Positions 30,653-60,573 are shown, numbered from the stretch's first letter. The stretch: DNA of 64,000 bases from IMGVR_UViG_3300027668_000008:62001-126000; one strand, 5' to 3'. Numbers and translations: made by a program. Notes: a model not told the origin generated them from the sequence alone.

Positions 30653-31084
30653 TTATTTATCAAAAGCCTTTAATGCATCTGAAACTTTACCAGGTCGTTT
30701 AGCAGGCATACTATCAGTATGACTTGAATGATCACTTTGATCTGTATCTGATACTAGCAGTAGTGCGTCTGGATCTACTCTACGAATTTTAAATTGCTCG
30801 CCGTTGGGTAATTCGACCATTACGCCACGTGTCCATCTACCATGTTCAACATATACCCATTGACCAGGCTTTAAGTTGTCTTTGTTTTTAGGACCTACTG
30901 CATAAATTTCAGCCCAACGTGGTCGAACGCCTTCTGATTTTCCGTCATCACTTCGTAGGATAATACCGCCTTGTGTTTTGCGTTCTTCGAAGTTCATATC
31001 TTTAACTAGTACGTTTTCATGTAATGCCCTTACGGACTCTATCTTATATACGCCTTGGTATGATGGTGCGTGATTTACTTGCAT
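30653..31084 (-). CDS. GroES-like co-chaperonin (start reassigned to MQVNH)
   Basis: RALHENVLV..KTQGGIIL..YAVGP..LKPG. Confidence 0.85.
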   Translation of the reverse strand: MQVNHAPSYQGVYKIESVRALHENVLVKDMNFEERKTQGGIILRSDDGKSEGVRPRWAEIYAVGPKNKDNLKPGQWVYVEHGRWTRGVMVELPNGEQFKIRRVDPDALLLVSDTDQSDHSSHTDSMPAKRPGKVSDALKAFDK

Positions 31085-31085
31085 A

Positions 31086-31613
31086 TTATATTCTTTTAAT
31101 CCCTTTTTTGGATCTTGCTTTTTGTTTCGGAGTTTGCTCCATCGGAACACTCACTGATTTAGTCGAAGCAAGTGCATCTGCAATACCTTTAGTAGACGTC
31201 TTTTCAACATCTTCAGGTCTTACAAAGTTACCATCTTCGTCTTCTACCCAATCGTCTTCAGACGCTGGTTCATCTAATGGTCCTGTCGGATCATCTTCGA
31301 TTATTTTGTTTGCTTCTGGTGTTGGTGCTGGTGGAATTTCTTCTTGCGGCTGTTGAGAAACAGGAGCAATATTTTCGCCCTCAATGTTAGGATCTCTAGG
31401 CATACCTGTATCTTCTGGTATAACAGATCCTTTAACGTCATAATGTTCTTTCATAACGTCATCTCTAGTTTTAAGAATTTTTCCGCCTGGGCCTAATTGG
31501 TCGCCACGTGCATTTACACGCATATTGCCAACTGCGATAATCGTTTCATTTTTTAAACCTAATGTTTCGATATCAACCATTTTGCCATTTGCAGTTCTGT
31601 ATGACTTTGCCAT
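31086..31613 (-). CDS. conserved hypothetical phage protein
   Basis: YRTANGK..AVGNMRVNARGD; late promoter at 31642-31647. Confidence 0.65.
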   Translation of the reverse strand: MAKSYRTANGKMVDIETLGLKNETIIAVGNMRVNARGDQLGPGGKILKTRDDVMKEHYDVKGSVIPEDTGMPRDPNIEGENIAPVSQQPQEEIPPAPTPEANKIIEDDPTGPLDEPASEDDWVEDEDGNFVRPEDVEKTSTKGIADALASTKSVSVPMEQTPKQKARSKKGIKRI

Positions 31614-31644: not shown

Positions 31645-32169
31645 TTATCTAAGGAACTCACCTACGTCTAAATCATAGTACATACTATTAACTTTGTGGA
31701 CGCCTAGTTTGTATAAAACAAAACTTGATACACTGGAACCACGTCCTAATCCCATTACTGTATTGTTTTTTCTCATAGTTTCAACAAAATACTTTAAAAA
31801 TCTTAATAAGTTTAGTAAATTACGTTCTTGAAACATTAGTAGTTCTGTACCAACTCTTTGTAGTTCAGCATCATTATCACACTGTACTAATAACCATTCA
31901 CATATATCGAACTCTGCATATTCTTTTGGCATATTCCAAATGCTTTGATTCTCTTTATCAAAATCTTCTATAGATATCTTAGGAGGTTCAATGCTATGTA
32001 ATCGCGGACCTTCACTATAAAGTTTATCCGCACTATTATTATAAGTATCCGGATCAGTTACATTGAACTTGCCAATGTCTAGTTTAGGATTCTTATATAA
32101 TGCTTCAAATAACTCTAATTCGTTATGGTAAACAATACCGTATTCGTCTGTGTGCATACTTCTTTCCAT
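31645..32169 (-). CDS. stand-alone fragment of DNA polymerase III alpha (DnaE-like)
   Basis: RVGTEL..GLGRGSSVSSFVLYKLGV..V..YDL..EFLR resembles DnaE GRGSAAGSLVAY.LGIT.DP..LLFERFL. Confidence 0.75.
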   Translation of the reverse strand: MERSMHTDEYGIVYHNELELFEALYKNPKLDIGKFNVTDPDTYNNSADKLYSEGPRLHSIEPPKISIEDFDKENQSIWNMPKEYAEFDICEWLLVQCDNDAELQRVGTELLMFQERNLLNLLRFLKYFVETMRKNNTVMGLGRGSSVSSFVLYKLGVHKVNSMYYDLDVGEFLR

Positions 32170-32199
32170 GTAATACTAGTATTATACAGTATTTAGGTA

Positions 32200-32442
32200 C
32201 TACTTGTCAAGTATATTTTGTTTATCTTTTGCTTCTTGTTTTTCGGCTTGTAATTGGGTCTGTCTGTTCCAACGCCTAGATTGTTCTTCATTTGCTTCAG
32301 CCAACATAACGTTTAACTGCAATATTGCTTGTGTATTGCCAATACTCATAAAGAACTTCATACGACTGTGCAGTTGACTCACACGTTCAACTAAATCGTC
32401 TTCTTTTAATTTAGATAGGTCATCACCTCTAGGATCAAACAT
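32200..32442 (-). CDS. hypothetical protein
   Basis: Coupled downstream of rpiB. Confidence 0.6.
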   Translation of the reverse strand: MFDPRGDDLSKLKEDDLVERVSQLHSRMKFFMSIGNTQAILQLNVMLAEANEEQSRRWNRQTQLQAEKQEAKDKQNILDK

Positions 32443-32896
32443 TTCGTAGTTTTCCTATTCTTTTTTCGTGTCTACCGCCTTCAAATTTTGTTGTAAAGAA
32501 TGCTTTAATCATGTCTTTAACATCTGTAATTTTAACAAAATCTGAACCTAAACACAATACATTTATATCATTGTGCTCACGAGCCATTTGGACTTCTCTA
32601 ATATTTCTACAGTTAGCCGCTCTAATGTGCGGATATCTGTTTGCGGCAATAGTTACACCAAATCCTGAACCACAAATTATGATTCCATGGGATTGGTATT
32701 CTAAGTTATTTGCAACTTCATGTACTATATCGGGATAATCTACAGACTTGTCATCATATGCTCCAACATCTGCTAATACACTAATGTTGAATAATGTAAC
32801 TTCTTCTTCTTTGTTTGGTGCTACATATTGATATATGAAGTTTTTAAGTTTTACACCTCTGTGGTCACTTCCCATTGATAAACTAACATCTTGCAT
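32435..32896 (-). CDS. rpiB: ribose-5-phosphate isomerase B
   Basis: GSDHRG, DYP, ICGSGFG, AREHND.NVLCLG, FEGGRH. Confidence 0.92.
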   Translation of the reverse strand: MQDVSLSMGSDHRGVKLKNFIYQYVAPNKEEEVTLFNISVLADVGAYDDKSVDYPDIVHEVANNLEYQSHGIIICGSGFGVTIAANRYPHIRAANCRNIREVQMAREHNDINVLCLGSDFVKITDVKDMIKAFFTTKFEGGRHEKRIGKLRNV

Positions 32897-32913: not shown

Positions 32914-34152
32914 TTAAAAGTAACGTTGTATTCCACCTTCTCTGACTGTATCTAGTGTTAAGCAGTGTAAACCGCCGTCCCAGAAGTTTCTGTGTCTAAA
33001 ACGACAGTAGATTGGTTCTATATTGTGTTGTTTTAACTTGTCATGTACTTGTTTTTGATAATTCATTGATAATATAGTGTTTTGATTAACACTTAACATA
33101 TTAACTTCAAATTGTGTTTCTTCTGAATATCCAGTCCAAGTACTTAACCATTGTTCAATAAAACTTGTATATCCTGGATTATCTTTAGCATCGGGCGTCC
33201 ACCATTTTCCATCAGTTATGTGCTTTTGTTGTTGCCAACTGCCATACTCTGAATCCATAGTTTTCTCTTTACCTGTACCAATTTGTAAAACTTCCCAACC
33301 CGGTAATGTTTCTTTAAAATCATCTTTGTTTAAATACGAAGCGGCAATAACAAGACCAGGCTTTGGTAAATTAAACGTTGCATCACTATGTCCGCCATTG
33401 GCAGTATTAGTACGTTTAAACTCTGGATACAATTCCACCATAGCGTCATCTAAATTTTCAACATCTTTTGTGTCGATAATTAAAGTGTCGCCTACTCGTG
33501 TTACTGTTGGTGCCCAGAACCCCCAAGTATAACTCATTGCTTTAATGTATTCAGGATCATTAGTAAATGTACCTTCTGGTATACTTGGATCAAACCATTC
33601 TGCTTTATATGTTGTATCGTATTCAACATAAGACTTTCTAGGTATTAATGGTCCTCTAAATTTTCTTTTCTTTGGATCAACTGTTAATCTCAAATCTAAG
33701 CAATCTGGATTAATAAAGTTTTGCCCACTTGTTGTCATAAACTTATGAAACTCTGGATACTGTTGTGTTAACAATATCTTTTTACCCATTGTTATAAGAT
33801 AATCTCTAGGCATTAATGCAGGTTTAGGAATTCCGTTAAATGCAGACTTCGTATCTTCGTAGTATTCCATAATATTGTCATACCCAACACCATGTGTGCT
33901 AGTGTCTGCCAATGTTGCGGCTTGTGTTAAATTAGGGTGTAAACGAACAACGTCAACTCCAAGGTCTTCTAACGTCTTTTGGATATTGTCTAAATCTTCA
34001 TGTGTTTCGTATAATAGTTTTTGCAGTAAATCTCTTAACTTGTGATCTTTAATGTCTTCAAAAAACTCTGGCTTATACACGTTACCAAGTACTACTTGTT
34101 TTAATGGATCCCATCCATTGTATGCATTTGCTTCGTTAATTCTATATGTCAT
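32914..34152 (-). CDS. amidinotransferase (pentein superfamily)
   Basis: NGWDPLKQVVLG, PRD, GHSD, VNML, GGLHCLTLD (catalytic Cys). Confidence 0.85.
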   Translation of the reverse strand: MTYRINEANAYNGWDPLKQVVLGNVYKPEFFEDIKDHKLRDLLQKLLYETHEDLDNIQKTLEDLGVDVVRLHPNLTQAATLADTSTHGVGYDNIMEYYEDTKSAFNGIPKPALMPRDYLITMGKKILLTQQYPEFHKFMTTSGQNFINPDCLDLRLTVDPKKRKFRGPLIPRKSYVEYDTTYKAEWFDPSIPEGTFTNDPEYIKAMSYTWGFWAPTVTRVGDTLIIDTKDVENLDDAMVELYPEFKRTNTANGGHSDATFNLPKPGLVIAASYLNKDDFKETLPGWEVLQIGTGKEKTMDSEYGSWQQQKHITDGKWWTPDAKDNPGYTSFIEQWLSTWTGYSEETQFEVNMLSVNQNTILSMNYQKQVHDKLKQHNIEPIYCRFRHRNFWDGGLHCLTLDTVREGGIQRYF

Positions 34153-34153
34153 T

Positions 34154-34576
34154 TTATAAAGGTCCTAATACCTCAAATCCTTCTATTTGTTTCTTATACG
34201 AATGTGCTTCACCTAGGTACATATACTTAAAACCTAAATCTCTGTATATTGCACATTCACTTCTTAAACTCTTTAAGCCTAAAAATAGTTTAGGATTTTT
34301 ATAATCCCAAGCAAACTGTAGTGCTTCTACATTTTCTTTATCTTGTCTGATAATAATACTAAATGCTACTAACTTGTCGTTATCATAATAGCCTATAACA
34401 TCATTGTTAGTATAATCACTTTCGAAGATAGGCATAACACTTTTAAACTTCTTGTACCTACAGTACTTTTTGTAGATTTCGTTTAATTCTGGTATATTAA
34501 CTGATTTGAGAATTTTGTAGTTGTCCATTGGACTATAATTACACTTGGATAAATCAACACGGGCATATACTGACAT
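34154..34576 (-). CDS. Ate1/Bpt C-terminal-like (GNAT-fold aminoacyl-tRNA transferase-like) protein
   Basis: YKKYCRYK, GYYDNDKLVAFS, WDY..PKLFLG..SL, FKYMYLG..YK. Confidence 0.6.
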   Translation of the reverse strand: MSVYARVDLSKCNYSPMDNYKILKSVNIPELNEIYKKYCRYKKFKSVMPIFESDYTNNDVIGYYDNDKLVAFSIIIRQDKENVEALQFAWDYKNPKLFLGLKSLRSECAIYRDLGFKYMYLGEAHSYKKQIEGFEVLGPL

Positions 34577-34602
34577 AGTTACTACTCCTGATTATTAAGT
34601 AG

Positions 34603-34608
34603 TATTTA
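34603..34608 (-). promoter_or_regulatory. late promoter for the Ate1-like + amidinotransferase unit
   Basis: TAAATA overlapping the upstream stop, followed by AGGAG SD. Confidence 0.6.
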
Positions 34609-35088
34609 TGGTTTTTCCGTTCTCCAAGAGACCACATCATCATAGTTCTCTTTTGACCAGTTATCGTAATATCCTTGTTTATCAAGGTGTTTACTTGCAT
34701 TATTTAATTTGCTTAATCTTTGTACTAGTATTAATATCGCTTTACCGAAGTTCATGTGTACTCCGTTAACAATTTCTTCATCTAACGGGTGATCTTCTAG
34801 TGCTACAACATCTTTCTTCATAGCAATTAAATTAAACTGCTTTACTAATAAAGATAATTCGCTTGGTGTGAATGTGTTTGTGTCTGCATACAATACAACA
34901 ACTTCGTACTTGTCGTCCCATTCTATTAAGTCAATTAATGTAGAAGCAGTCGTAACCGCATCTACTTTAGTATACTGGATTTTATCTACTGCCATAGCCT
35001 GTTTAGCAAATGGGCAAGGCACTGTGCCTATTGTTTCGTTATGCACAGAAACAAAATTTAAAATCCATGTTTTAATTTCTTCAATCAC
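34606..35088 (-). CDS. CPF-motif protein (DUF1415/DUF6875-like)
   Basis: WILNFV..PCPFAKQA; DHP. Confidence 0.5.
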   Translation of the reverse strand: MIEEIKTWILNFVSVHNETIGTVPCPFAKQAMAVDKIQYTKVDAVTTASTLIDLIEWDDKYEVVVLYADTNTFTPSELSLLVKQFNLIAMKKDVVALEDHPLDEEIVNGVHMNFGKAILILVQRLSKLNNASKHLDKQGYYDNWSKENYDDVVSWRTEKP

Positions 35089-35492
35089 AAATCGCCGTCT
35101 TGCCTATTCTCTGAATAGTGAACATCGAATTCACCGCCTGGATAACGTGCTTTAAGTTTGTTTACATTTTCTGCAACTACTTCATTAGGGTCAATACCCA
35201 ATGCCCTGCAACTATTAATCCAATACCAAATAATATCACCAAGTTCTCGTTTAGCATGAAAGATAGTTTCATTATCCAACGGTTTACCTTGAAATATACA
35301 TTTTTTAACAATTTCTGCAAACTCTCCTCCTTCGCTCGCCATTCCAATCGAGCCTGTTAATAGTAATGCCATGTTAACACCACTGTCTTTTTCTAGTTTC
35401 TCTAACTGTGAAGTTAGTCCACCAGTTTCGTTACTTTGTAAAGAAGTTACCTTCTCTACGAATTCTTGATATTTATTTAGGTCTACCTGCAT
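35085..35492 (-). CDS. mazG: MazG-like nucleotide pyrophosphohydrolase
   Basis: SEGGEFAEIVKK, ELGDIIWY, N..KL..RYP. Confidence 0.88.
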   Translation of the reverse strand: MQVDLNKYQEFVEKVTSLQSNETGGLTSQLEKLEKDSGVNMALLLTGSIGMASEGGEFAEIVKKCIFQGKPLDNETIFHAKRELGDIIWYWINSCRALGIDPNEVVAENVNKLKARYPGGEFDVHYSENRQDGDL

Positions 35493-36459
35493 TAACTACT
35501 CCGTTTTTTAGTGTGGTATTGAACAATGAAGAAACACTTTCTTCATTTGTTATTCTTCTGATTGCTTCGCCGAACAAAGCACCCGTTGATAATTGAATTG
35601 TTTTCTTACACTCGTCGGGGCAACGCCACTCGATTGAATCTGTAATTACTAAACTGTCTAAACAACTGTTTTCTACTTTTTTACAAGCGTCATGTGTTAA
35701 TACACCGTGTGTTATGTATGCTCTAACAGATAATGCTCCTTGATCCATAATTACTTGTGCGGCATTACATAATGTTCCACCGCTATCAATAATGTCATCT
35801 ACTAATATTGCGTGTTTGCCTTCTACATCTCCTATTAGTCCCATTACTTCGCTTTCGCCTGCTTTGGGTCTACGTTTGTCTACAATAGCAATATCACCAT
35901 TAAACATTTCTGCAAATTTTCTAGCTCGTACTGTACCACCAGCATCCGGTGAAACAAATACAGTTTCAATAAATGTGTTGTCGTACATACCAAGTCTACG
36001 TTTGATATCTTTTGCAAATACAATACGACTTGTTAAGTCATCTACAGGAATATCAAAAAATCCTTGTATCTGTCCTGCGTGTAAGTCCATTGTAAGAACT
36101 CTGTCTGCACCTGATTCTGTAATTAAGTTTGCTACTAGTTTTGCCGTGATAGGAGTACGTGAAGCACTCTTACGGTCTTGTCTGGCATAGCCAAAGTAAG
36201 GAATAACTGCGGTAATACGTTTAGCACTACTACGTTTTGCGGCATCAATCATAACCATTAATTCCATAAGGTTATCATTAACTGGTGAACTTGTAGATTG
36301 GATAATAAAGACGTCTTCTCCTCTGAGATTTTCTAAAAACTCAACACTACATTCGCCGTCAGCGAATTTAGATATTTTAGAGGGAACAATGTTAGTGAAG
36401 CAATGTTCAGCAACTGCGTTAGCGAGTTCCTGATTGCTATTTCCTGCGATGATTTTCAT
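35473..36459 (-). CDS. prs: ribose-phosphate pyrophosphokinase
   Basis: FADGE, PYFGYARQDRK, DLHAGQIQGFF, VSPDAGG, VDDIIDSGGT; promoter TTGACT-N17-TATAAT at 36488-36516. Confidence 0.96.
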   Translation of the reverse strand: MKIIAGNSNQELANAVAEHCFTNIVPSKISKFADGECSVEFLENLRGEDVFIIQSTSSPVNDNLMELMVMIDAAKRSSAKRITAVIPYFGYARQDRKSASRTPITAKLVANLITESGADRVLTMDLHAGQIQGFFDIPVDDLTSRIVFAKDIKRRLGMYDNTFIETVFVSPDAGGTVRARKFAEMFNGDIAIVDKRRPKAGESEVMGLIGDVEGKHAILVDDIIDSGGTLCNAAQVIMDQGALSVRAYITHGVLTHDACKKVENSCLDSLVITDSIEWRCPDECKKTIQLSTGALFGEAIRRITNEESVSSLFNTTLKNGVVNAGRPK

Positions 36460-36534
36460 TGAAACTCCGTTGGTATATTATATTCTAATTATAATACAAA
36501 CGTAGAGTGAAGTCAAGTAAATTCTAAAAAAGAA

Positions 36535-37320: not shown

Positions 37321-39639
37321 TTAAGGTAAGTCTATTATCTGAACTCTTGGGAATTTAATATAATGATTACCTTCGGTAATATCTGTGCGTCTTACGTCGA
37401 TATTAGGGAAAAATCTTGTATTTGTACTATCTACACTAGTTGTAGTCGAATCAAACGTTGTTTCTCCACCTACTAACCATGCTGTTGGACTACTAGTTTT
37501 ATCGTAGTTTTTACTAAAGTATTGGTCAACTACATATCTATCTACTGTAAAATCAATCTTGTTTAAGTCAACACCATCGTTAATACTTAGGTAATAAAGA
37601 ATACGTTTACCTGCACCTGGTTTCAAATATGCAATAACACACGCACTAGTGAATCCTAAAATGGTTCCATCATCTTGTACACTAGTCATCCAACGTGGAA
37701 GTGTTCTACTATCCTGGATACCTAGTTTATCTTCAACACGTTTTTTCATACGACTTAAACTTGCTGGATATAAAATTTTGTTATTGTTTGCACTTGCTCT
37801 TAATGTAGAGTTTTCAATGTGTGCAGACTCATCAGCAGTAATAGGGTTATTAATACTTGAGTATTTAATTTCTAAGTTACTAGTTGTTAACGTTGTTCCT
37901 GCTGGAGCGTCGAATTTGTCTAGTACTTCAACATACACAACATCATATATATGATTGTTATCGTTGTCAGTTGCTTTTGCAGTTTTAAAGTCACCAAAAC
38001 GTAAATTTATGTTATGATGGTTTCTATAAACACTTTCAAAGTACTTGCTCAATGTGTTTGCTGGTAGTCCTGGTAAAAACAACATTCTTGGGTATGCTTG
38101 TCTACCAAAGTAAATGTCTCTTGCTCTGTATAAATCTTCGTCTGGGATATCCTGTCTATTATAGATAACATTTTCCCATATGTTTCTATCAGTTTGTGTA
38201 GGCAATAAGTCGATATATAAGTCTTCATAAGGAGCACTATACTCGTTCTTAACTACAACACTAAATGTTCTAGTATTGTACAATGTACCTGTATTATCTC
38301 TTGCCTTAATTGTAAAATTATATGTTCCATCAACTGTAGTTGTTGCTGAACTAGTTACCACATCTAATTTTGTTGTTCCTGAGTCCATTTGGAATGTTTT
38401 AAAACTTGCTCTGCCTTCTAATTCTCCAGTGGAGTTTAGTAGTAGTCCTTGTGGCAGTTTACTACCTGCTTGTAGTTCGTATATAAGTTTTGTATTGTTC
38501 TTACTACTTGCATTTACATACAATGTACTAACTGCACCGGCTTGTAATATGCCTAAATTTTTAACAGTATTCCAAGTAATATCTAAATCTTTATTAGTTA
38601 TTAATTGCATTGTAAACGTATGTGTATCACTAAAGTTAGCCGCATCGCTTGTTCTTGCCGCTTTAACTGTAAATGAATAATCTTGTATAACTTTGTTTAA
38701 GTATGGAAGTTTACCATGTATCCAACCTGTTCCAGAATCAATAGTTAATCCCGATGGTGTTGCTCCACTTTCAATACTGTATGTAATATCGGCGCCACTG
38801 TAGTCAATAGCATCTACTTTAAAACTAAACATATTGTCGTGCAAGAATGTTCCAATTTTAGTTGCACTGTGTCTAATAATTGGACCATATGCACTACTTG
38901 TATCTGATTGGATTAAGTTGTCATCTTTATCAGCAGTAATTGTGTTACTATCTGCTTTTAAATCAAATGCACCATATACATATATACTAAATTCCTTAAC
39001 GATAAATGCTTTACCGTCACTTGCTCTAACAACAAAGTGATGTCTTTTACTGTAACTACCAACACCTGTACCAAAGTCGAATATAACTGTATCAAATGCT
39101 GAAGTATCAAAACTTCCTGCTTCACTTGATCCGTCTACTAACTGTGGTTGAATAAATCCGTTAACATAACCATCGGTTGTCAACTTTGTTCCAACAGGCA
39201 ATGTACCACTTAACAATTCGTATGTTAGTGTATCTTCACTATCGCTGTCATTTACTATAATCTTTTTATTAATATACTGGAAATCTATAAAGTCACCTAA
39301 ATCTGATGCACTTTCCCATACTGGAACGTCTTGTCCTGTAACGATTAATTGGAATGTTTTGTCGTTAACAATACCGGTTGAATCTTTTGCTCTAATAGTG
39401 AACTTGCTGGCAACATCTCTGCTTACTTCCACAGGTACGCCTTGGATAACCTTTCTAGGGTTACCAAATAATGTACCATTACTTGCTAGTTCGATACCGT
39501 CAGGTAATGTTCCAGAAACAACTGAATACGCAATAACACCCGAAGACGGGTCTCTTGCGTCTAAAGAGAATCTGTAGAATTGACCTTCTTGTATTACGCC
39601 TAGGTTACTTGTGGTTGTGTACCAAACTGGTGCCGCCAT
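37321..39639 (-). CDS. Ig/cadherin-like repeat baseplate/structural protein
   Basis: Repeated Y.L.SG.LP.G..L...G.I.G and F...A.D motifs; late promoter at 39664-39669. Confidence 0.75.
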   Translation of the reverse strand: MAAPVWYTTTSNLGVIQEGQFYRFSLDARDPSSGVIAYSVVSGTLPDGIELASNGTLFGNPRKVIQGVPVEVSRDVASKFTIRAKDSTGIVNDKTFQLIVTGQDVPVWESASDLGDFIDFQYINKKIIVNDSDSEDTLTYELLSGTLPVGTKLTTDGYVNGFIQPQLVDGSSEAGSFDTSAFDTVIFDFGTGVGSYSKRHHFVVRASDGKAFIVKEFSIYVYGAFDLKADSNTITADKDDNLIQSDTSSAYGPIIRHSATKIGTFLHDNMFSFKVDAIDYSGADITYSIESGATPSGLTIDSGTGWIHGKLPYLNKVIQDYSFTVKAARTSDAANFSDTHTFTMQLITNKDLDITWNTVKNLGILQAGAVSTLYVNASSKNNTKLIYELQAGSKLPQGLLLNSTGELEGRASFKTFQMDSGTTKLDVVTSSATTTVDGTYNFTIKARDNTGTLYNTRTFSVVVKNEYSAPYEDLYIDLLPTQTDRNIWENVIYNRQDIPDEDLYRARDIYFGRQAYPRMLFLPGLPANTLSKYFESVYRNHHNINLRFGDFKTAKATDNDNNHIYDVVYVEVLDKFDAPAGTTLTTSNLEIKYSSINNPITADESAHIENSTLRASANNNKILYPASLSRMKKRVEDKLGIQDSRTLPRWMTSVQDDGTILGFTSACVIAYLKPGAGKRILYYLSINDGVDLNKIDFTVDRYVVDQYFSKNYDKTSSPTAWLVGGETTFDSTTTSVDSTNTRFFPNIDVRRTDITEGNHYIKFPRVQIIDLP

Positions 39640-43558: not shown

Positions 43559-43842
43559 ATCCTTATTAAAATCTTTCCGTCTGGAGCATTGTCCAAATCT
43601 AATTGACAACCTAGTCTTTGCCCAGGTCTTCCTTCTAAGTCAAGCATATCTTGTTCTTCTTGACTTGGTTCTTTAAAATATTGTTCACCTTCTAACACTG
43701 TGCAACAACATGAACCACAGGCTACTGAACCTCCGCAAGTTCCCCAATCGACATCGTCGTATAGAGCAATCATTACATTGTCCGTGCCTGTGTATTCTCG
43801 TTGAATCTTCTTGCCTTTATACAAGGCTGTTAGAATTGGCAT
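43555..43842 (-). CDS. fdx: 2Fe-2S ferredoxin (ISC/adrenodoxin type)
   Basis: CGGSVACGSC, EE.DMLD, RLGCQ. Confidence 0.85.
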   Translation of the reverse strand: MPILTALYKGKKIQREYTGTDNVMIALYDDVDWGTCGGSVACGSCCCTVLEGEQYFKEPSQEEQDMLDLEGRPGQRLGCQLDLDNAPDGKILIRI

Positions 43843-44742: not shown

Positions 44743-45756
44743 TTATCTTGTCCTATTCATTACTTTAGTTTTATTGATACAAAACTTATTACACACTACA
44801 GACTCTCTATTGTCTATAATGCTGGATAGTCTTTTATTATACCACGAATTGGATAGAATGTCAAGTAGTTTGTTTTCATATATGTTGTTAACCTGTGGAT
44901 CAAATCCAGGCATATCGAACGGTTCTGCTTTGGCTTGTGGTGCTCTAGTGGCTGTCCAACAACAAGGCCAAACTGTTCCCCATGGATCTATTTGTATTCT
45001 CATGTCTTGATACCATATACACGGAGTATCTAGTTCTGCTTGTTCCGGTATATATGTTGTTTTATACTTGTCTTCTTTAAGTATTATGCTCTTACGTTTA
45101 AAGTTTTTAACTTTATCGTGTGATATTTTATAACTCTTATCATACACTTCTAATGTCTCATTCTTAGCAAAACTAGGTCGAATCCAGTGGCTACAACACC
45201 CCAAATCCGTCGCTAGTTGGGTAATAGCGTCTAACTGCTCCACATTGTAGTCGAAAGCAGTAGTAACAATTTCGGCATTTCCGCCTACATCATTAAATGC
45301 TTTAACGTTTTCACATATCTTTTTGAAACTTGTATTACGTCTATATAAATGGTGAGTATCTTCTAATCCATCTATTGCAAACTCAATCTTATGTGATTTA
45401 GCACGTTGTAATACTTTAGATAGTTTTTCCCACCATTTAGTATCACGCATACTTCCGTTTGTAGCAATGCCAATAGATGCTTCTGGGTGGTGTGTTACAA
45501 TGCTTTCACAAATGGCAATAAGTTCAGGGTGCATACACGCATCTCCCCAAACTCCATTAAAATGAATTTTTTTGAATAGTGATCCTTTTGTATCTTTGGA
45601 CATAACTCTGTCCCATACTTTTGGATCTATATGGTTAAGTTGTAAATGAGGTATTGTGTCTCCGCCGTCTATGTTTCTTACACAACTGACACACTTTGCG
45701 TTACAATAACTAGTAGGGTCTACTTGAATGAATTGTACACGTTTTGACCATTGCAT
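44743..45756 (-). CDS. radical SAM protein with SPASM/Twitch-like C-terminus
   Basis: CNAKCVSC (CxxxCxxC); TNG; C..IDPWG.V.PCC..C..FC. Confidence 0.88.
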   Translation of the reverse strand: MQWSKRVQFIQVDPTSYCNAKCVSCVRNIDGGDTIPHLQLNHIDPKVWDRVMSKDTKGSLFKKIHFNGVWGDACMHPELIAICESIVTHHPEASIGIATNGSMRDTKWWEKLSKVLQRAKSHKIEFAIDGLEDTHHLYRRNTSFKKICENVKAFNDVGGNAEIVTTAFDYNVEQLDAITQLATDLGCCSHWIRPSFAKNETLEVYDKSYKISHDKVKNFKRKSIILKEDKYKTTYIPEQAELDTPCIWYQDMRIQIDPWGTVWPCCWTATRAPQAKAEPFDMPGFDPQVNNIYENKLLDILSNSWYNKRLSSIIDNRESVVCNKFCINKTKVMNRTR

Positions 45757-48215: not shown

Positions 48216-49008
48216 TTAAAAATTCTCTAGTTTTATCTGTTACTATGCCTGTTATATTTAACACGGGTCTTGGGCTGTGTCCGTAATTACAAGTTCCATG
48301 TGGAACATCTCTCCAGGGCCATGTAATACAATCACCACGTTTCCACTTTATTAATAGATTACCTAATTGAAATATCTGTCCTTGTCGTTGATCATCTAAA
48401 AATATCATTGTTCTCATTACTTTGCGTTGATCCAAGTCTCCCTTATCAGCATTATCATATTCTTGTCTGGATTTTTTAAGTACTCCACCAAAGTTATCTA
48501 AATGCCAATAAAAACATTGTCCAGGCTTTTGTACATCAAACTTTACTACACCCGGCTTTTCAAAACCAAATGCATCTACAATGTATTGTAAACTATCTTT
48601 TAATTTAGGGTGTAATGTTCTGTTAGCAATAGTGTATCCACCATCTATATCATAACCCCATTTTTTAAAGTCGTTTTCTTCCCAGTCGTTTGTCGTGTCT
48701 TTTCTTGTTTGTTTACGAAACTTAAAGTCTGCTGGTTTTGTTTCTGCACTTAATTCTGCAACTGCTTGATCCCAGTCACCACTAAAGTTTCCAACAGGTA
48801 TTACTGGTGGGCAATCGCCATCTAATTCTGCAATATCATCTCTCGATTCATCGAAATGATATCTACTTGTTGCTTTACAAAAATCGTATAAACTATTATA
48901 ACCATCTTTACTTACAGGTGGTTGTGTTTTTAGTTTTTCCCACATCGACAATGGGTCTCTACTAAATTCTAAATCATAAAATTGCATTAATATTCTCCAA
49001 AGGCCCAA
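48184..49008 (-). CDS. 2OG-Fe(II)/cupin oxygenase-like protein
   Basis: QKPGQ..WHLD; WKRGD; PHGTCN.G..PR. Confidence 0.65.
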   Translation of the reverse strand: MGLWRILMQFYDLEFSRDPLSMWEKLKTQPPVSKDGYNSLYDFCKATSRYHFDESRDDIAELDGDCPPVIPVGNFSGDWDQAVAELSAETKPADFKFRKQTRKDTTNDWEENDFKKWGYDIDGGYTIANRTLHPKLKDSLQYIVDAFGFEKPGVVKFDVQKPGQCFYWHLDNFGGVLKKSRQEYDNADKGDLDQRKVMRTMIFLDDQRQGQIFQLGNLLIKWKRGDCITWPWRDVPHGTCNYGHSPRPVLNITGIVTDKTREFLNDARYSNINI

Positions 49009-49574
49009 TGCCTTTCTTTACACCACCAACATTCTTTGCATGGTCTCGGTGGCTGTGTTGCTTCGCAACTTATAGTTAACGGAAAAAGTGTTTCAAGTAA
49101 GTTGTACTCTTTGTAACGTTTAGCAATGTCTTTTTTATCTAAGTCTGCTAAAGGTCTATACATAGTTAAACCGTTTTTAGTTGTAACTACTTTTTCTAGT
49201 TTTTGATTGCGTGTTTCGTCTGATCCTTCTCCAAGATACTCGGAAGGGTTTCGAGTAAAGCCGTTTATGTAACAATCTAAATTGTGGAATTCTGCAAACT
49301 TTTTTCGTAACTTGTCACGTTTTGCTTTTCCTTCGGCTCTATCTTTAAAAGTATATATTGCATATGCTTTAATATTACTTATCTTTAATTCGTTTAGTAT
49401 TTTGTCAACATTGTCTAAATGATATTGCCCATCATCTAATCTTGAACCTACATACAAGTATAATTCACTGTTAGGGTGTGTTTTAGATATTTGATACAAC
49501 ATAAGTGAACTGTCAGCACCTCCGCTAAACAATACACCAATCTTGTTATGTTGTGGTATTACACTCGTTTCCAT
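48987..49574 (-). CDS. QueC-like PP-loop ATPase with Zn site
   Basis: LFSGGADS; T.SC..PCKECWWC.ER. Confidence 0.75.
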   Translation of the reverse strand: METSVIPQHNKIGVLFSGGADSSLMLYQISKTHPNSELYLYVGSRLDDGQYHLDNVDKILNELKISNIKAYAIYTFKDRAEGKAKRDKLRKKFAEFHNLDCYINGFTRNPSEYLGEGSDETRNQKLEKVVTTKNGLTMYRPLADLDKKDIAKRYKEYNLLETLFPLTISCEATQPPRPCKECWWCKERHWAFGEY

Positions 49575-59881: not shown

Positions 59882-60573
59882 GATCCTGCAGAACGATTGT
59901 TCCCTTCAGTGTAACCTTTGTCTTCTAAACGTTGTTTCATTTCTAAGTTAAAATCCATGCTACCACATATCATAACTTTATCAGTTTTTGGAGTAATGTC
60001 GTCCCATATACCGGCGTCAATGTATTTGGTAATTCGTCCTTGGTTCTTAAATTCTTCTCTAGTTACTGTTGGGAAATATGTAATGTCTTGTTCTTCTAAG
60101 AATGTGTTATATGATCTCAAATCTTGTACAAGTGGAACAGTCCAATACACTGATATACTATCAAAGTAATCATATGTTGTTGGGTCTCTTAATAAACTAA
60201 TAAACGGAGCAATGCCTGTACCAGTTGCAACTAAATGCAAATTGCCTCCTAGTTCTAAATTATTAAGTGTAAGAGTGCCAGTGGGTTTTTCACCTACTAT
60301 TAATTCATCATCTACTTTAATATCTTTTAGTCTACTAGTTAATGGACCATCTTCTACTTTAATACTGTAGAATTCTAAAAACTCATCATACGGTCCACTA
60401 GTAAAACTGTATGCTCTCATTATAGGTTTATTTTTTTGTAGTTTTTTTGACCAGTTATCTAATCCAATCATAGTAAACTCACCCGCAACAAATCTGTATG
60501 TTGGTGGTCTTTCTAATTTTATTTTAAATAGTTTATCAGTGTAATGTGTAACTTCTATGACTTTTAAATTCAT
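59851..60573 (-). CDS. fpr: ferredoxin/flavodoxin-NADP+ reductase
   Basis: GEFTMIGL, RAYS, GPLTSRL, TGTGIAPF, MICGS, ERAFVG. Confidence 0.93.
   Translation of the reverse strand: MNLKVIEVTHYTDKLFKIKLERPPTYRFVAGEFTMIGLDNWSKKLQKNKPIMRAYSFTSGPYDEFLEFYSIKVEDGPLTSRLKDIKVDDELIVGEKPTGTLTLNNLELGGNLHLVATGTGIAPFISLLRDPTTYDYFDSISVYWTVPLVQDLRSYNTFLEEQDITYFPTVTREEFKNQGRITKYIDAGIWDDITPKTDKVMICGSMDFNLEMKQRLEDKGYTEGNNRSAGSYTLERAFVG

What the first reader, a model, noticed from the sequence alone, without database searches (positions are those of the whole stretch)
32914..35088. Late Ate1/Bpt-like transferase + amidinotransferase unit, next to a CPF-motif protein
Seen: a late promoter (34603-08) drives a minimal 140-aa Ate1-C-like protein and, 1 nt later, a pentein amidinotransferase with intact His/Cys motifs; a PCPFA protein lies upstream. 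Known: Ate1/Bpt transfer amino acids from aminoacyl-tRNA, and amidinotransferases move the amidino group of Arg. The phage also carries tRNA-Arg and tRNA-Leu. Inference: an arginine-centred pathway that aminoacylates or amidinates a virion protein, glycan or DNA base late in infection.
Basis: partly seen in the sequence, partly recalled or inferred. Interest (0 to 1): 0.6.

Follow-up and report, generated by a model that had tools for sequence, protein, structure and literature searches.

The report
Phage haem-oxygenase, tRNA-transferase, amidinotransferase module
Three adjacent genes of a marine jumbo phage belong to a gene module found almost only in viruses and not described before: a small haem-enzyme-like protein, a stripped-down aminoacyl-tRNA transferase and an amidinotransferase, which probably build or decorate an arginine-derived compound whose target is unknown.

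Summary
On the minus strand lie a 160-aa 'PCPFA' protein (34606-35088), a 140-aa protein that passes Pfam's ATE_C threshold (34154-34576), and, 1 nt later, a 412-aa amidinotransferase relative with intact His/Asp/Cys (32914-34152). A late-promoter-like CATAAATA precedes the 140-aa gene.

In 89 related viral loci the constant partner of the ATE_C-like gene is the PCPFA protein (83/89). Next comes a virus-specific DUF6614 gene (72/89), which this genome lacks. The amidinotransferase is optional (34/89) but lies beside the module in nearly every locus that has it, in several gene orders.

Natural fusions support coupling: ATE_C::DUF6614, PCPFA::amidinotransferase and radical-SAM::PCPFA.

The PCPFA protein is most likely a miniature thiolate-haem enzyme of the P422/DUF6875-YqcI/YcgG kind. 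Its best fold match is AglA, an arginine-guanidine N-hydroxylase.

The ATE_C-like protein keeps Ate1's donor-pocket residues, including the Glu that binds arginine. It lacks the ATE_N domain.

The closest precedent is AglC (Arg-tRNA-dependent ligase) followed by AglA in argolaphos biosynthesis. An arginine-centred tailoring pathway is therefore plausible, but the acceptor is unknown. Nothing supports virion, glycan or DNA as the target.

The parts
36488..36516 (-). Sigma-70-like promoter (TTGACT-17-TATAAT) upstream of prs. It could drive prs-mazG-CPF160 and read through into the module.
   Evidence: Consensus scan, 11 of 12 matches. A pattern match only.
35473..36459 (-). Ribose-phosphate pyrophosphokinase (PRPP synthetase), a neighbour in this lineage only.
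   Evidence: Pfam Pribosyltran_N 3.6e-52 and Pribosyl_synth 7.5e-27.
35085..35492 (-). MazG-like NTP pyrophosphohydrolase. It lies upstream of the module in the window's clade (L007, L010, L011).
   Evidence: Pfam MazG 5.2e-08, PHROG 229 at 7e-47. Synteny.
34606..35088 (-). CPF160, a 160-aa protein with invariant Cys25-Pro26 (motif GxVPCPFA) and His100. It is probably a miniature thiolate-haem enzyme related to P422/DUF6875, DUF1415 and YqcI/YcgG. It is the constant partner of the ATE_C-like gene.
   Evidence: DUF6875 and DUF1415 each hit 19 of 26 family members, best E 2e-5. AglA (9ub3) is the top fold match in Foldseek (TMq 0.50) and in VIA-align (Z 5.9, 142 of 160 residues, the only hit at Z>=5). 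Language-model neighbours are DUF1415/DUF6875 clusters. Cys, Pro and His stay invariant down to 25% identity. It is adjacent to ATE_C in 83 of 89 loci.
34603..34610 (-). T4-type late-promoter-like motif CATAAATA. It overlaps the CPF160 stop codon, 27 nt before the ATG of the ATE_C-like gene.
   Evidence: The motif is enriched upstream of genes, 34 of 381 against 1.6 expected. It is conserved in the same spacer in L007, L010 and L011. Function not shown.
34154..34576 (-). ATEC, a 140-aa single-lobe GNAT of the Ate1/Bpt C-terminal (ATE_C) type. It is presumably an aminoacyl-tRNA-dependent transferase with an acidic donor pocket. There is no ATE_N domain.
   Evidence: Pfam ATE_C 26.4 bits, above the cut-off of 25, with 27 of 27 members matching. 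NCBIfam bacterial arginyltransferase 2e-4 over residues 58-137. Ate1 is the best PDB sequence hit. The confident model (pLDDT 91) best matches MprF-C, Ate1, FemX and Sba18 in Foldseek. Mapped onto klAte1, W90, S103, E107 and Y127-K128 align with W260, S273, E277 and Y303-K304.
32914..34152 (-). AMT, a 412-aa divergent member of the AGAT/SxtG/StrB1/HsvA amidinotransferase group (pentein fold). The PRD, HxD and C-terminal Cys motifs are intact. It is an optional member of the module.
   Evidence: PDB profile search gives SxtG 7.9e-20, AGAT 5e-18, StrB1 3e-17 and HsvA 2e-13. Invariant residues are listed. It is present in 34 of 89 loci, beside the module in nearly all of them (L023's copy is about 5 kb away), in at least 4 arrangements. 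It occurs fused to CPF in P0491.
32435..32896 (-). Ribose-5-phosphate isomerase B, a downstream neighbour in this lineage only.
   Evidence: Pfam LacAB_rpiB 9.7e-43. Present only in L009 and L010 among relatives.
43603..43785 (-). [2Fe-2S] ferredoxin gene (matched segment). A possible electron donor if CPF160 is a haem mono-oxygenase. The link is conjectural.
   Evidence: Pfam Fer2 26.5 bits, above the cut-off, at G000:105603-105785.
59953..60234 (-). FNR-like oxidoreductase gene (matched segment of a 242-aa frame). A possible reductase partner. The link is conjectural.
   Evidence: Pfam NAD_binding_1 29.6 bits, above the cut-off, at G000:121953-122234. A NAD_binding_1 gene also lies 6 kb upstream of the module in L007.
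It is one of 8 phage tRNAs, and nothing shows a specific link to the module.
   Evidence: ARAGORN.

Best explanation
The three genes are this phage's version of a conserved enzyme module found almost only in viruses: CPF160, then ATEC, then optionally DUF6614 and/or AMT.

Shown here:
- The genes travel together across unrelated genomic backbones, in shuffled orders and as natural fusions.
- ATEC belongs by sequence to the Ate1/Bpt C-terminal family. It keeps residues that align, in a weak HMMER alignment, with the klAte1 residues shown by mutagenesis to bind the arginyl moiety and the tRNA 3' end (Trp, Ser, Glu, Tyr-Lys).
- AMT keeps the amidinotransferase catalytic residues.
- CPF160 resembles thiolate-haem oxygenases of the P422/YqcI-YcgG kind in fold, in weak profile hits and in its Cys-Pro motif.

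Inferred mechanism:
1. ATEC takes a basic aminoacyl group, most likely arginine, from aminoacyl-tRNA and ligates it to an amine acceptor.
2. CPF160, with a ferredoxin-type electron donor, oxygenates or N-hydroxylates the product, most plausibly on its guanidine. This repeats the AglC then AglA steps of argolaphos biosynthesis.
3. Where present, as here, AMT makes or re-uses the guanidino group by amidino transfer from arginine.

The acceptor and the biological role of the product (metabolite, antimetabolite or macromolecular adduct) are not known. In this phage the module can be transcribed from an upstream sigma-70-like promoter. ATEC and AMT can also be transcribed from a late-type promoter.
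For: Linkage:
- Across 89 loci, CPF is present in 83, DUF6614 in 72 and AMT in 34.
- CPF is present in 34 of 34 dereplicated groups that have enough flanking sequence.
- At least 8 different genomic backbones carry the module, and AMT occupies at least 4 positions relative to it.
- Fusions occur: P0009 ATE_C+DUF6614, P0491 CPF::AMT (context) and P0434 rSAM-SPASM::CPF.

ATEC. The klAte1 pocket residues come from PMC9351520, mapped through the alignments.

CPF.
- The haem ligand of AglA is Cys44, and the fold is a four-stranded sandwich (PMC12866846).
- The P422 haem motif is RxGxVCP (bioRxiv 10.64898/2025.12.11.692455).

Precedent: AMPn-Arg is made by AglC with ArgRS, tRNA and Arg, and is then hydroxylated by AglA. 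The argolaphos cluster carries GNAT-type aminoacyl-tRNA ligases (PMC8976061).

AMT.

Possible redox partners are encoded in the window.

Pieces identical to all three genes occur in contigs from marine RNA libraries.
Against: - No biochemical evidence exists for any member.
- CPF160 is 20-140 residues shorter than characterised P422/YqcI enzymes. It lacks the conserved Arg of RxGxVCP. It misses the Pfam thresholds (15-17 bits against about 25), and its fold match is only Z 5.9. Haem binding is therefore unproven.
- Fold alone does not separate ATEC from acetyl-CoA GNATs. VipF, FemX and MprF tie at Z about 14.
- ATEC lacks ATE_N, which in Ate1 supplies acceptor recognition and the basic tRNA-binding helix.
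- Two of the six mapped Ate1 residues are Bpt-like (A85, M119).
- Most module-bearing phages lack AMT, and this phage lacks DUF6614, so no single fixed pathway fits all of them.
- CPF-like genes also occur alone in cyanophages and podophages.
- The complex prediction for AMT with CPF gave no verdict.
Confidence: 0.42

Rival explanations
1. Protein or peptide modification. ATEC adds an amino acid to the N-terminus or a side chain of a phage or host protein or peptide, as Ate1 and Bpt do. CPF160 and AMT then modify peptidyl residues. The system would be like a RiPP or pearlin pathway, or an N-degron pathway that alters stability or function. DUF6614 might be an adaptor or a scaffold.
For: - Peptide N-terminal aminoacylation is the native chemistry of ATE_C enzymes.
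- A radical-SAM/SPASM domain, typical of peptide maturases, is fused to CPF in P0434.
- Such genes flank the module in L001 and L014.
- A distant AMT relative in cyanophage S-SCSM2R was found in the virion proteome.
Against: - ATEC has no ATE_N domain, so it lacks the Arg80 pocket that reads acidic N-termini.
- No conserved candidate substrate gene accompanies the module in all clades.
- This genome has more than 13 rSAM paralogues far from the module, so adjacency to rSAM genes elsewhere may be incidental.
- DUF6614 is absent from this genome.
Confidence: 0.2
2. Nucleotide or DNA-base hypermodification. The module builds or decorates a non-canonical base or nucleotide that is fed through PRPP-dependent salvage into phage DNA.
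For: Nucleotide-metabolism neighbours recur next to the module:
- Prs, MazG and RpiB in this window.
- A phosphoribosyltransferase and a PNP_UDP_1 phosphorylase directly after DUF6614 in another clade.
- A QueC-like gene near the module in L001.
Against: - These neighbours are specific to single lineages: Prs and RpiB occur only in L009 and L010, and the PRTase/PNP pair in one closely related clade.
- They are common auxiliary metabolic genes in hyperplastic islands.
- To my knowledge, no known DNA-modification pathway uses an ATE_C, pentein or P422-type enzyme.
- No glycosylase, transglycosylase or base-swapping enzyme is linked to the module.
Confidence: 0.12
3. ATEC is an ordinary acyl-CoA-dependent GNAT. 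It would, for example, acetylate an amine or guanidino compound made by AMT. The ATE_C similarity would then reflect only shared GNAT ancestry.
For: - In the exhaustive structure search the acetyl-CoA enzyme VipF ties for first place (Z 14.1), and many acetyltransferases score Z 11-13.
- The Pfam ATE_C score is only just above threshold.
Against: - All 27 family members hit ATE_C, and only one hits an acetyltransferase family, weakly.
- The only PDB sequence hits at or below E 0.3 are arginyltransferases, and the NCBIfam hits are arginyltransferase models.
- The Ate1 donor and tRNA residues, including the YK pair, are invariant.
- Reading the sequence, I found no Q/RxxGxG/A CoA-pyrophosphate motif after strand 4 (the sequence there is NPKLFLGLKS).
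- The top Foldseek hits are aminoacyl-tRNA-dependent enzymes.
Confidence: 0.12
4. The three genes are unrelated auxiliary genes that merely sit together in a variable island.
For: The region is an island of metabolic genes (Prs, MazG, RpiB), and its gene content varies between relatives.
Against: - The CPF-ATEC adjacency holds in 83 of 89 loci across different backbones.
- The two genes overlap or abut in 68 of 75 same-strand pairs.
- AMT stays beside the module in several orders and on either strand.
- Three kinds of natural fusion exist.
Confidence: 0.03

Closest known systems
AglC and AglA of argolaphos biosynthesis (Streptomyces monomycini)
   Same: A tRNA-dependent arginine ligase acts first: AglC needs ArgRS, tRNA and Arg. 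A small thiolate-haem 'sandwich' enzyme then N-hydroxylates the guanidine of the arginyl conjugate. AglA is the best structural match of CPF160.
   Different: - CPF160 is about 80 residues shorter than AglA and shares no detectable sequence similarity with it.
- ATEC is an ATE_C-type single GNAT lobe. Its relation to AglC was not tested, because no AglC sequence was on hand.
- The phage module has no phosphonate genes.
- It adds DUF6614 and/or an amidinotransferase, and it is viral.
Ate1 / Bpt aminoacyl-tRNA-protein transferases (ATE_N + ATE_C)
   Same: - The Pfam ATE_C match is above threshold.
- The GNAT fold is shared.
- Residues equivalent to klAte1 Trp260, Ser273, Glu277 and Tyr303-Lys304 are conserved. 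The acidic residue at the Glu277 position suggests a basic aminoacyl donor.
   Different: - ATEC has 140 aa, against about 240 for Bpt and about 500 for Ate1.
- There is no ATE_N domain, so no Arg80 acceptor pocket and no basic alpha-3 tRNA helix. None is found elsewhere in the genome.
- Six residues are deleted before the YK pair.
- Two pocket positions are Bpt-like.
Cytochrome P422 (DUF6875) and DUF1415
   Same: - Weak but consistent profile hits occur in 19 of 26 members.
- The Gly-x-Val-(Pro)-Cys-Pro motif resembles the P422 haem motif RxGxVCP.
- Both have a four-stranded sandwich with flanking helices.
   Different: - The scores fall below Pfam thresholds.
- The motif's Arg is missing and an extra Pro is present.
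- CPF160 has 150-170 aa against 180-300.
- The P422 substrate-binding motifs (SBR1-3) are not recognisable.
- P422 enzymes act on tryptophan.
AGAT / SxtG / StrB1 / HsvA amidinotransferases
   Same: The profile match runs along the whole length. The PRD, HxD and C-terminal GG(F/L)HC motifs are conserved.
   Different: - No Pfam family is hit.
- There is a large insertion between the PRD and HxD blocks, and there are Trp-rich inserts.
- It is not clear that the triad Asp aligns.
- The acceptor is unknown.
FemX, MprF C-domain, Sba18/Sbb17 (aminoacyl-tRNA-dependent GNAT ligases)
   Same: These are the best or joint-best structural matches of the ATEC model. They show that such GNATs can acylate sugars, lipids and small molecules as well as proteins.
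   Different: All of them have two GNAT lobes in one chain, whereas ATEC has one. A second lobe would have to come from a homodimer or a partner protein, which was not tested.

Membership tests
Pfam ATE_C (PF04377), C-terminal domain of Ate1/Bpt | Score at or above the curated gathering threshold. | tested here: met
   26.4 bits against 25. 25.8 bits in the genome scan. 27 of 27 family members match.
Ate1/Bpt aminoacyl-tRNA-protein transferase (full enzyme) | An N-terminal ATE_N domain that recognises acidic N-termini and binds tRNA. | tested here: not met
   The protein is 140 aa and begins within the GNAT lobe. The ATE_N scan of the whole genome found only a spurious hit that runs through stop codons.
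Ate1/Bpt aminoacyl-tRNA-protein transferase (full enzyme) | Conserved donor-pocket and tRNA-end residues (klAte1 S255, W260, S273, E277, Y289, Y303-K304). | tested here: met
   W90, S103, E107 and Y127-K128 are invariant or nearly so and align to W260, S273, E277 and Y303-K304. A85 and M119 are Bpt-like. This rests on weak HMMER alignments.
Ate1/Bpt aminoacyl-tRNA-protein transferase (full enzyme) | Transfer of an amino acid from aminoacyl-tRNA. | not testable with these tools
   Needs an enzyme assay.
Acetyl-CoA-dependent GNAT | A Q/RxxGxG/A pyrophosphate-binding motif after strand 4. | tested here: inconclusive
   Reading the sequence, I found no such motif at NPKLFLGLKS. Fold matches to acetyltransferases are nevertheless as strong as those to FemX and MprF.
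Cytochrome P422 / DUF6875 (PF21780) | Pfam score at or above threshold. | tested here: not met
   The window protein scores 15.1 bits against 24.5 and 14.2 bits in the genome scan. 19 of 26 relatives hit it, best E 2e-5.
Cytochrome P422 / DUF6875 (PF21780) | Haem-binding motif RxGxVCP with the axial Cys. | tested here: inconclusive
   GxVPCP is present and Cys-Pro is invariant, but the Arg is absent and a Pro is inserted (motif taken).
YqcI/YcgG haem N-hydroxylases (AglA, DcsA, GntA) | The sandwich fold, with a thiolate ligand near the N-terminus. | tested here: inconclusive
   AglA is the top hit in two aligners (TMq 0.50; Z 5.9 over 142 residues, model 1-160 against chain 24-224), which places Cys25 near Cys44. 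No residue-level superposition was available. Pfam YqcI_YcgG hits only 1 of 26 members, at E 0.054.
YqcI/YcgG haem N-hydroxylases (AglA, DcsA, GntA) | Haem binding and oxygenase activity. | not testable with these tools
   Needs spectroscopy and an assay.
Amidinotransferases of the AGAT/StrB1 type (pentein fold) | Catalytic Cys near the C-terminus, the His-x-Asp block and the substrate-binding PRD. | tested here: met
   C397, H255, D257 and R116-D117 are invariant in 24 sequences and align to the corresponding blocks of SxtG and AGAT.
Amidinotransferases of the AGAT/StrB1 type (pentein fold) | Recognition by a curated family model. | tested here: not met
   No amidinotransferase family is hit in Pfam or NCBIfam. 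Recognition rests on PDB sequence and profile hits.
CPF-ATEC-DUF6614(-AMT) viral module (defined here) | CPF adjacent to ATEC. | tested here: met
   A 29-nt spacer separates them in the window. The adjacency holds in 83 of 89 loci.
CPF-ATEC-DUF6614(-AMT) viral module (defined here) | A DUF6614 gene next to ATEC. | tested here: not met
   There is no DUF6614 anywhere in the 306.7-kb record. The sister lineage L011 has it between ATEC and AMT. The record is estimated to be 87% complete.

The most novel reading that the evidence does not exclude
Hundreds of large uncultured phages from the sea and from other sampled environments carry a self-contained pathway that depends on aminoacyl-tRNA and resembles natural-product biosynthesis. 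Its parts are a minimal Ate1-type ligase, a new miniature class of thiolate-haem oxygenase, DUF6614 and sometimes an amidinotransferase. During infection it would make an N-oxygenated arginine or guanidine derivative. That product could be an antimetabolite, a signal or NO-type donor, or a covalent adduct. This would be a previously unrecognised way for viruses to draw on the host's charged-tRNA pool for chemistry other than translation.
Probability: 0.3. Interest if true: 0.85.

Novelty: new variant of a known kind. Interest (0 to 1): 0.62.

Why it matters
Each enzyme superfamily is known, but this four-part combination has not been described as far as I could find. It is almost confined to viruses. 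More than 519 IMG/VR contigs carry it, against only 3 loci, all in MAGs, among 185,579 species genomes. No ATE_C-like relative was found by tblastn in any cultured-phage record.

If the inference holds, it would be a widespread phage-borne pathway that uses aminoacyl-tRNA for non-ribosomal chemistry. It would also give a new minimal scaffold for thiolate-haem oxygenases and for Ate1-type transferases.

It would assign a testable function to three 'hypothetical' viral families: the CPF family, which also occurs alone in cultured cyanophages such as S-PM2, the ATE_C-only family, and DUF6614.

Tried and rejected
- Complex prediction of AMT with CPF160 gave no verdict (score 0.00). It is evidence neither for nor against binding.
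- The PDB profile hits of the CPF family to mitofusin-1 (E 0.003) were rejected as spurious, because they do not cover the invariant Cys/His pattern and the fold is unrelated.
- DUF6614 gave no informative match in a PDB profile search or in Pfam beyond its own family. The atlas search found only viral DUF6614 clusters.
- One preprint predicts DUF6614 for an anti-Druantia ORF of phage DruSM1. I did not verify this and do not rely on it.
- PADLOC gave no hit for any module protein.
- The ATE_N scan of the genome gave only a hit through stop codons.
- I tested whether the 221-aa gene upstream of ATEC in L001 is a CPF homologue. It is not (23% identity). The real CPF lies downstream in that locus.
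- I considered a split Ate1, in which the 'PCPFA' protein would stand in for ATE_N with its Cys motif. I rejected it because the model's fold matches AglA and the profile hits are to DUF6875 and DUF1415.
- tblastn of ATEC against cultured phages found nothing.
- Dereplicating at 90% ATEC identity lumped loci with and without AMT, so the dereplicated AMT count (21 of 34) is an overestimate. The raw count is 34 of 89.
- One locus (L058) looked as if it lacked DUF6614, but this was an artefact of my ORF filter. tblastn finds the gene there.
- The RNA-library evidence comes from assembled contigs, which cannot show strand, transcript ends or absence of DNA.
Full report
WHAT IS THERE

The window is bases 62001-126000 of a single 306,714-bp viral record. 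CheckV estimates the record to be 87% complete. GC content is about 35%, and most genes are on the minus strand.

The phage is marine. Near-identical sequence occurs in DNA runs of at least 9 marine or seawater studies.

By its clamp loader, the closest cultured relatives are the Pseudomonas jumbo phages of the PA5oct group (56.6% identity), followed by Agrobacterium phage Atu_ph07.

In the region of the finding the minus strand carries, in order of transcription:

| Gene | Coordinates | Note |
|---|---|---|
| prs | 35473-36459 | PRPP synthetase |
| mazG | 35085-35492 | |
| CPF160 | 34606-35088 | 160 aa, motif V-P-C-P-F-A |
| ATEC | 34154-34576 | 140 aa |
| AMT | 32914-34152 | 412 aa, starts one base after the ATEC stop |
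| rpiB | 32435-32896 | |

THE THREE PROTEINS

ATEC. It passes Pfam's curated threshold for ATE_C (26.4 bits against 25). All 27 aligned relatives hit that family, best E 6.6e-7. NCBIfam's bacterial arginyltransferase models align to residues 58-137.

A family profile finds only arginyltransferases at or below E 0.3 in the PDB. The predicted structure is confident (pLDDT 91) and is a single GNAT lobe.

- Foldseek ranks first the aminoacyl-tRNA-dependent enzymes MprF C-domain, Ate1, FemX and Sba18/Sbb17.
- The exhaustive aligner ties VipF (acetyl-CoA), FemX and MprF at Z about 14.

Fold alone therefore does not decide the donor.

The residues say more. I used the HMMER alignment to klAte1, where chain numbering equals the paper's numbering plus 4, checked on five residues. 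I combined it with the mutagenesis in PMC9351520.

| klAte1 residue | Role | ATEC residue |
|---|---|---|
| Trp260 | tRNA 3' end | W90 (invariant) |
| Ser273 | donor pocket | S103 (nearly invariant) |
| Glu277 | charge that binds the arginyl side chain; Gln in Leu-specific Bpt | E107 (invariant) |
| Tyr303-Lys304 | | Y127-K128 (invariant) |
| Ser255 | donor pocket | A85 (Bpt-like) |
| Tyr289 | donor pocket | M119 (Bpt-like) |

There is no ATE_N domain, either in the protein or elsewhere in the genome. The acceptor-recognition half of Ate1/Bpt is therefore missing.

AMT. Pfam does not recognise it. The single sequence does hit HsvA, SxtG, AGAT and StrB1 at the C-terminus. A 24-sequence profile matches them along the whole length: SxtG 7.9e-20, AGAT 5e-18, StrB1 3e-17 and HsvA 2e-13. 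Invariant residues are R116-D117 (PRD), H255-x-D257 and C397. It is a divergent amidinotransferase with its catalytic residues intact.

CPF160.
- Nineteen of 26 family members hit both DUF6875 and DUF1415, best E 2e-5 and 1e-4. One hits YqcI_YcgG.
- The language-model search places the protein next to DUF1415/DUF6875 clusters.
- The model (pLDDT 84) has as its best solved match AglA of Streptomyces monomycini, in two independent aligners. Foldseek gives TMq 0.50 over about 185 columns. VIA-align gives Z 5.9 over 142 of 160 residues, the only chain at Z>=5, with model 1-160 against chain 24-224.

AglA is a YqcI/YcgG-family thiolate-haem enzyme with a four-stranded 'sandwich' fold. Cys44 ligates its haem, and it N-hydroxylates the guanidine of an arginyl conjugate (PMC12866846).

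DUF6875 has been renamed cytochrome P422. It is a thiolate-haem family with the same kind of sandwich fold and a haem motif RxGxVCP (bioRxiv 10.64898/2025.12.11.692455). CPF160 has G-x-V-P-C-P.

Cys25, Pro26 and His100 remain invariant down to 25% identity. That holds in fused forms and in stand-alone homologues from cultured marine phages: S-PM2 p080, Syn1, S-RIM44, HMO-2011 gp66 and CRP-345.

I therefore read CPF160 as a miniature member of this haem-thiolate superfamily. Several caveats apply. Its scores are below Pfam thresholds. The motif's Arg is absent. It is 20-140 residues shorter than characterised members. The fold Z-score is modest.

ATEC relatives are abundant:
- 443 clusters at 90% identity;
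- more than 519 IMG/VR contigs;
- no ATE_C-like hit by tblastn in any cultured-phage record;
- only 3 loci, all in MAGs, among 185,579 species genomes.

In 89 loci, including the window, I clustered all ORFs within 6 kb of ATEC.

| Partner | Loci with it (of 89) |
|---|---|
| CPF | 83 |
| DUF6614 (about 110 aa, virus-specific) | 72 |
| AMT | 34 |

Every other family tracks one particular genomic backbone. Among 34 dereplicated groups with enough flanking sequence, CPF is present in all 34. CPF and ATEC overlap or lie within 15 nt of each other in 68 of 75 same-strand pairs.

The module sits in at least eight different contexts: between gp47 and gp46 homologues, next to a T4-type baseplate gene, after a helicase, after PutA and MazG, and others. 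AMT appears between ATEC and DUF6614, after DUF6614, before ATEC, or on the opposite strand.

Natural fusions join the parts:
- ATE_C+DUF6614 in P0009;
- CPF::AMT in P0491, E 2e-57 to the window's AMT. That locus also has a separate CPF and an ATEC gene just upstream;
- radical-SAM/SPASM::CPF in P0434.

However, CPF160 is the obligatory partner and AMT is an accessory. This genome lacks DUF6614 altogether, although the sister lineage L011 has it between ATEC and AMT.

EXPRESSION SIGNALS

The motif ATAAATA lies within 40 nt upstream of 34 of 381 genes, against 1.6 expected. For TATAAATA the figures are 10 against 0.5.

The copy before ATEC, CATAAATACTAC, resembles the one before the 772-aa gene at 37321-39639 (not annotated here), TATAAATACTAG. 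The motif is conserved in the 25-29-nt CPF-ATEC spacer of L007, L010 and L011. A late-type promoter is therefore credible.

A near-consensus sigma-70-like promoter also precedes prs (36516-36488). No terminator-like site was found on the minus strand between it and ATEC.

Marine RNA-library contigs with no differences cover pieces of AMT, ATEC, mazG and prs, and a CPF piece has 3 differences. One contig spans 34481-34631, across the spacer. These are contigs, and DNA carry-over cannot be excluded.

MECHANISM

The best precedent for a tRNA-dependent ligase paired with a small thiolate-haem enzyme is argolaphos biosynthesis. AglC, supplied with ArgRS, tRNA, ATP and arginine, ligates arginine to aminomethylphosphonate. 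AglA then hydroxylates the N-epsilon of that arginyl conjugate, and it is inactive on free arginine. The argolaphos cluster carries GNAT-superfamily aminoacyl-tRNA ligases.

By analogy I propose three steps:
1. ATEC ligates a basic amino acid, probably arginine given E107, from aminoacyl-tRNA to an amine.
2. CPF160 oxygenates the product.
3. AMT makes or recycles a guanidino group.

The window also encodes a [2Fe-2S] ferredoxin and an FNR-like protein that could supply electrons, but such genes are common in marine phages.

The steps shown are gene linkage, family membership and residue conservation. The steps inferred are the donor, haem binding, the order of reactions and every aspect of the acceptor.

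The rivals are peptide or protein modification, nucleotide or DNA modification, an acyl-CoA GNAT, and chance adjacency. Each is weighed in the Rival explanations section. Nothing found here points specifically to a virion protein, a glycan or a DNA base.

One side note: a distant AMT relative in cyanophage S-SCSM2R (ORF266) was detected in that phage's virion proteome. It lies beside KdsA/KdsB and 2OG oxygenases.

VERDICT

The finding is better described as a widespread, undescribed viral enzyme module built from known superfamilies.

I rate it a new variant of a known kind, with moderately high interest. The function remains an inference that a few standard biochemical experiments could settle.

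Noticed in passing
G000:C1:1200-18000 and 290500-305100; window 45199-45741: The phage carries at least 13 radical-SAM/SPASM paralogues. They are concentrated at both ends of the contig, probably as one large cluster on a permuted genome. One copy lies in the window (tblastn). Related genes flank the module in L001 and L014, and one is fused to CPF in P0434.
   Followed up: partly
window 48999-49544 (-): A homologue (27.6% identity, E 4e-15) of the 220-aa gene that has a faint QueC hit in L001. It lies among the phage tRNA genes.
   Followed up: no
G000:C1:150442-150775 (-), outside the window: ARAGORN calls a tmRNA-like gene with tag peptide ANNNYQPEMALAA.
   Followed up: no
window 31645-32169 (-) and 32181-32210 (-): A 174-aa stand-alone fragment related to the DNA polymerase III alpha NTPase region (Pfam 2.3e-08, PHROG 'DNA polymerase' 5.6e-40). 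A perfect TTGACA-18-TATAAT promoter-like site precedes it. The same small gene follows the module in L007 and L011.
   Followed up: no
L099:2492-2956 (S-PM2 p080); L100:2483-3010 (HMO-2011 gp66): Stand-alone CPF-like 'hypothetical proteins' occur in cultured cyanomyoviruses and in marine podoviruses. The same Cys-Pro and His are invariant. These proteins could be used to test haem binding.
   Followed up: partly
L101:2656-3549 (S-SCSM2R_266): A shorter amidinotransferase relative (31.8% identity to AMT residues 214-405) lies next to KdsA/KdsB and 2OG-Fe(II) oxygenases. The published study found it in the virion proteome.
   Followed up: partly
L093:2844-5496: One metagenomic contig has two CPF copies: a free one before ATEC, and a second fused to the N-terminus of AMT.
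   Followed up: yes
L071:2507-3049; L085:10758-11282: In one T4-like clade a phosphoribosyltransferase and a short PNP_UDP_1 phosphorylase follow DUF6614 directly. This echoes Prs, RpiB and MazG around the module in the window.
   Followed up: partly
L007:4082-6928: A full-length PutA (proline dehydrogenase plus aldehyde dehydrogenase, 948 aa) is encoded just upstream of MazG and the module in a related marine phage. An FNR-like gene and a glutaredoxin gene lie nearby.
   Followed up: no
L090, L091 (Haliscomenobacter MAG contigs of 148 and 183 kb): The only 'bacterial genome' hits for ATEC are large contigs in Bacteroidota MAGs. They are probably mis-binned phage contigs, or they may hint at hosts for some clades.
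   Followed up: no
window 30653-31150 (-): A GroES/Cpn10-like gene is conserved a few kb downstream of the module in the window's clade. Pfam gives a weak Cpn10 hit on the L007 homologue.
   Followed up: no
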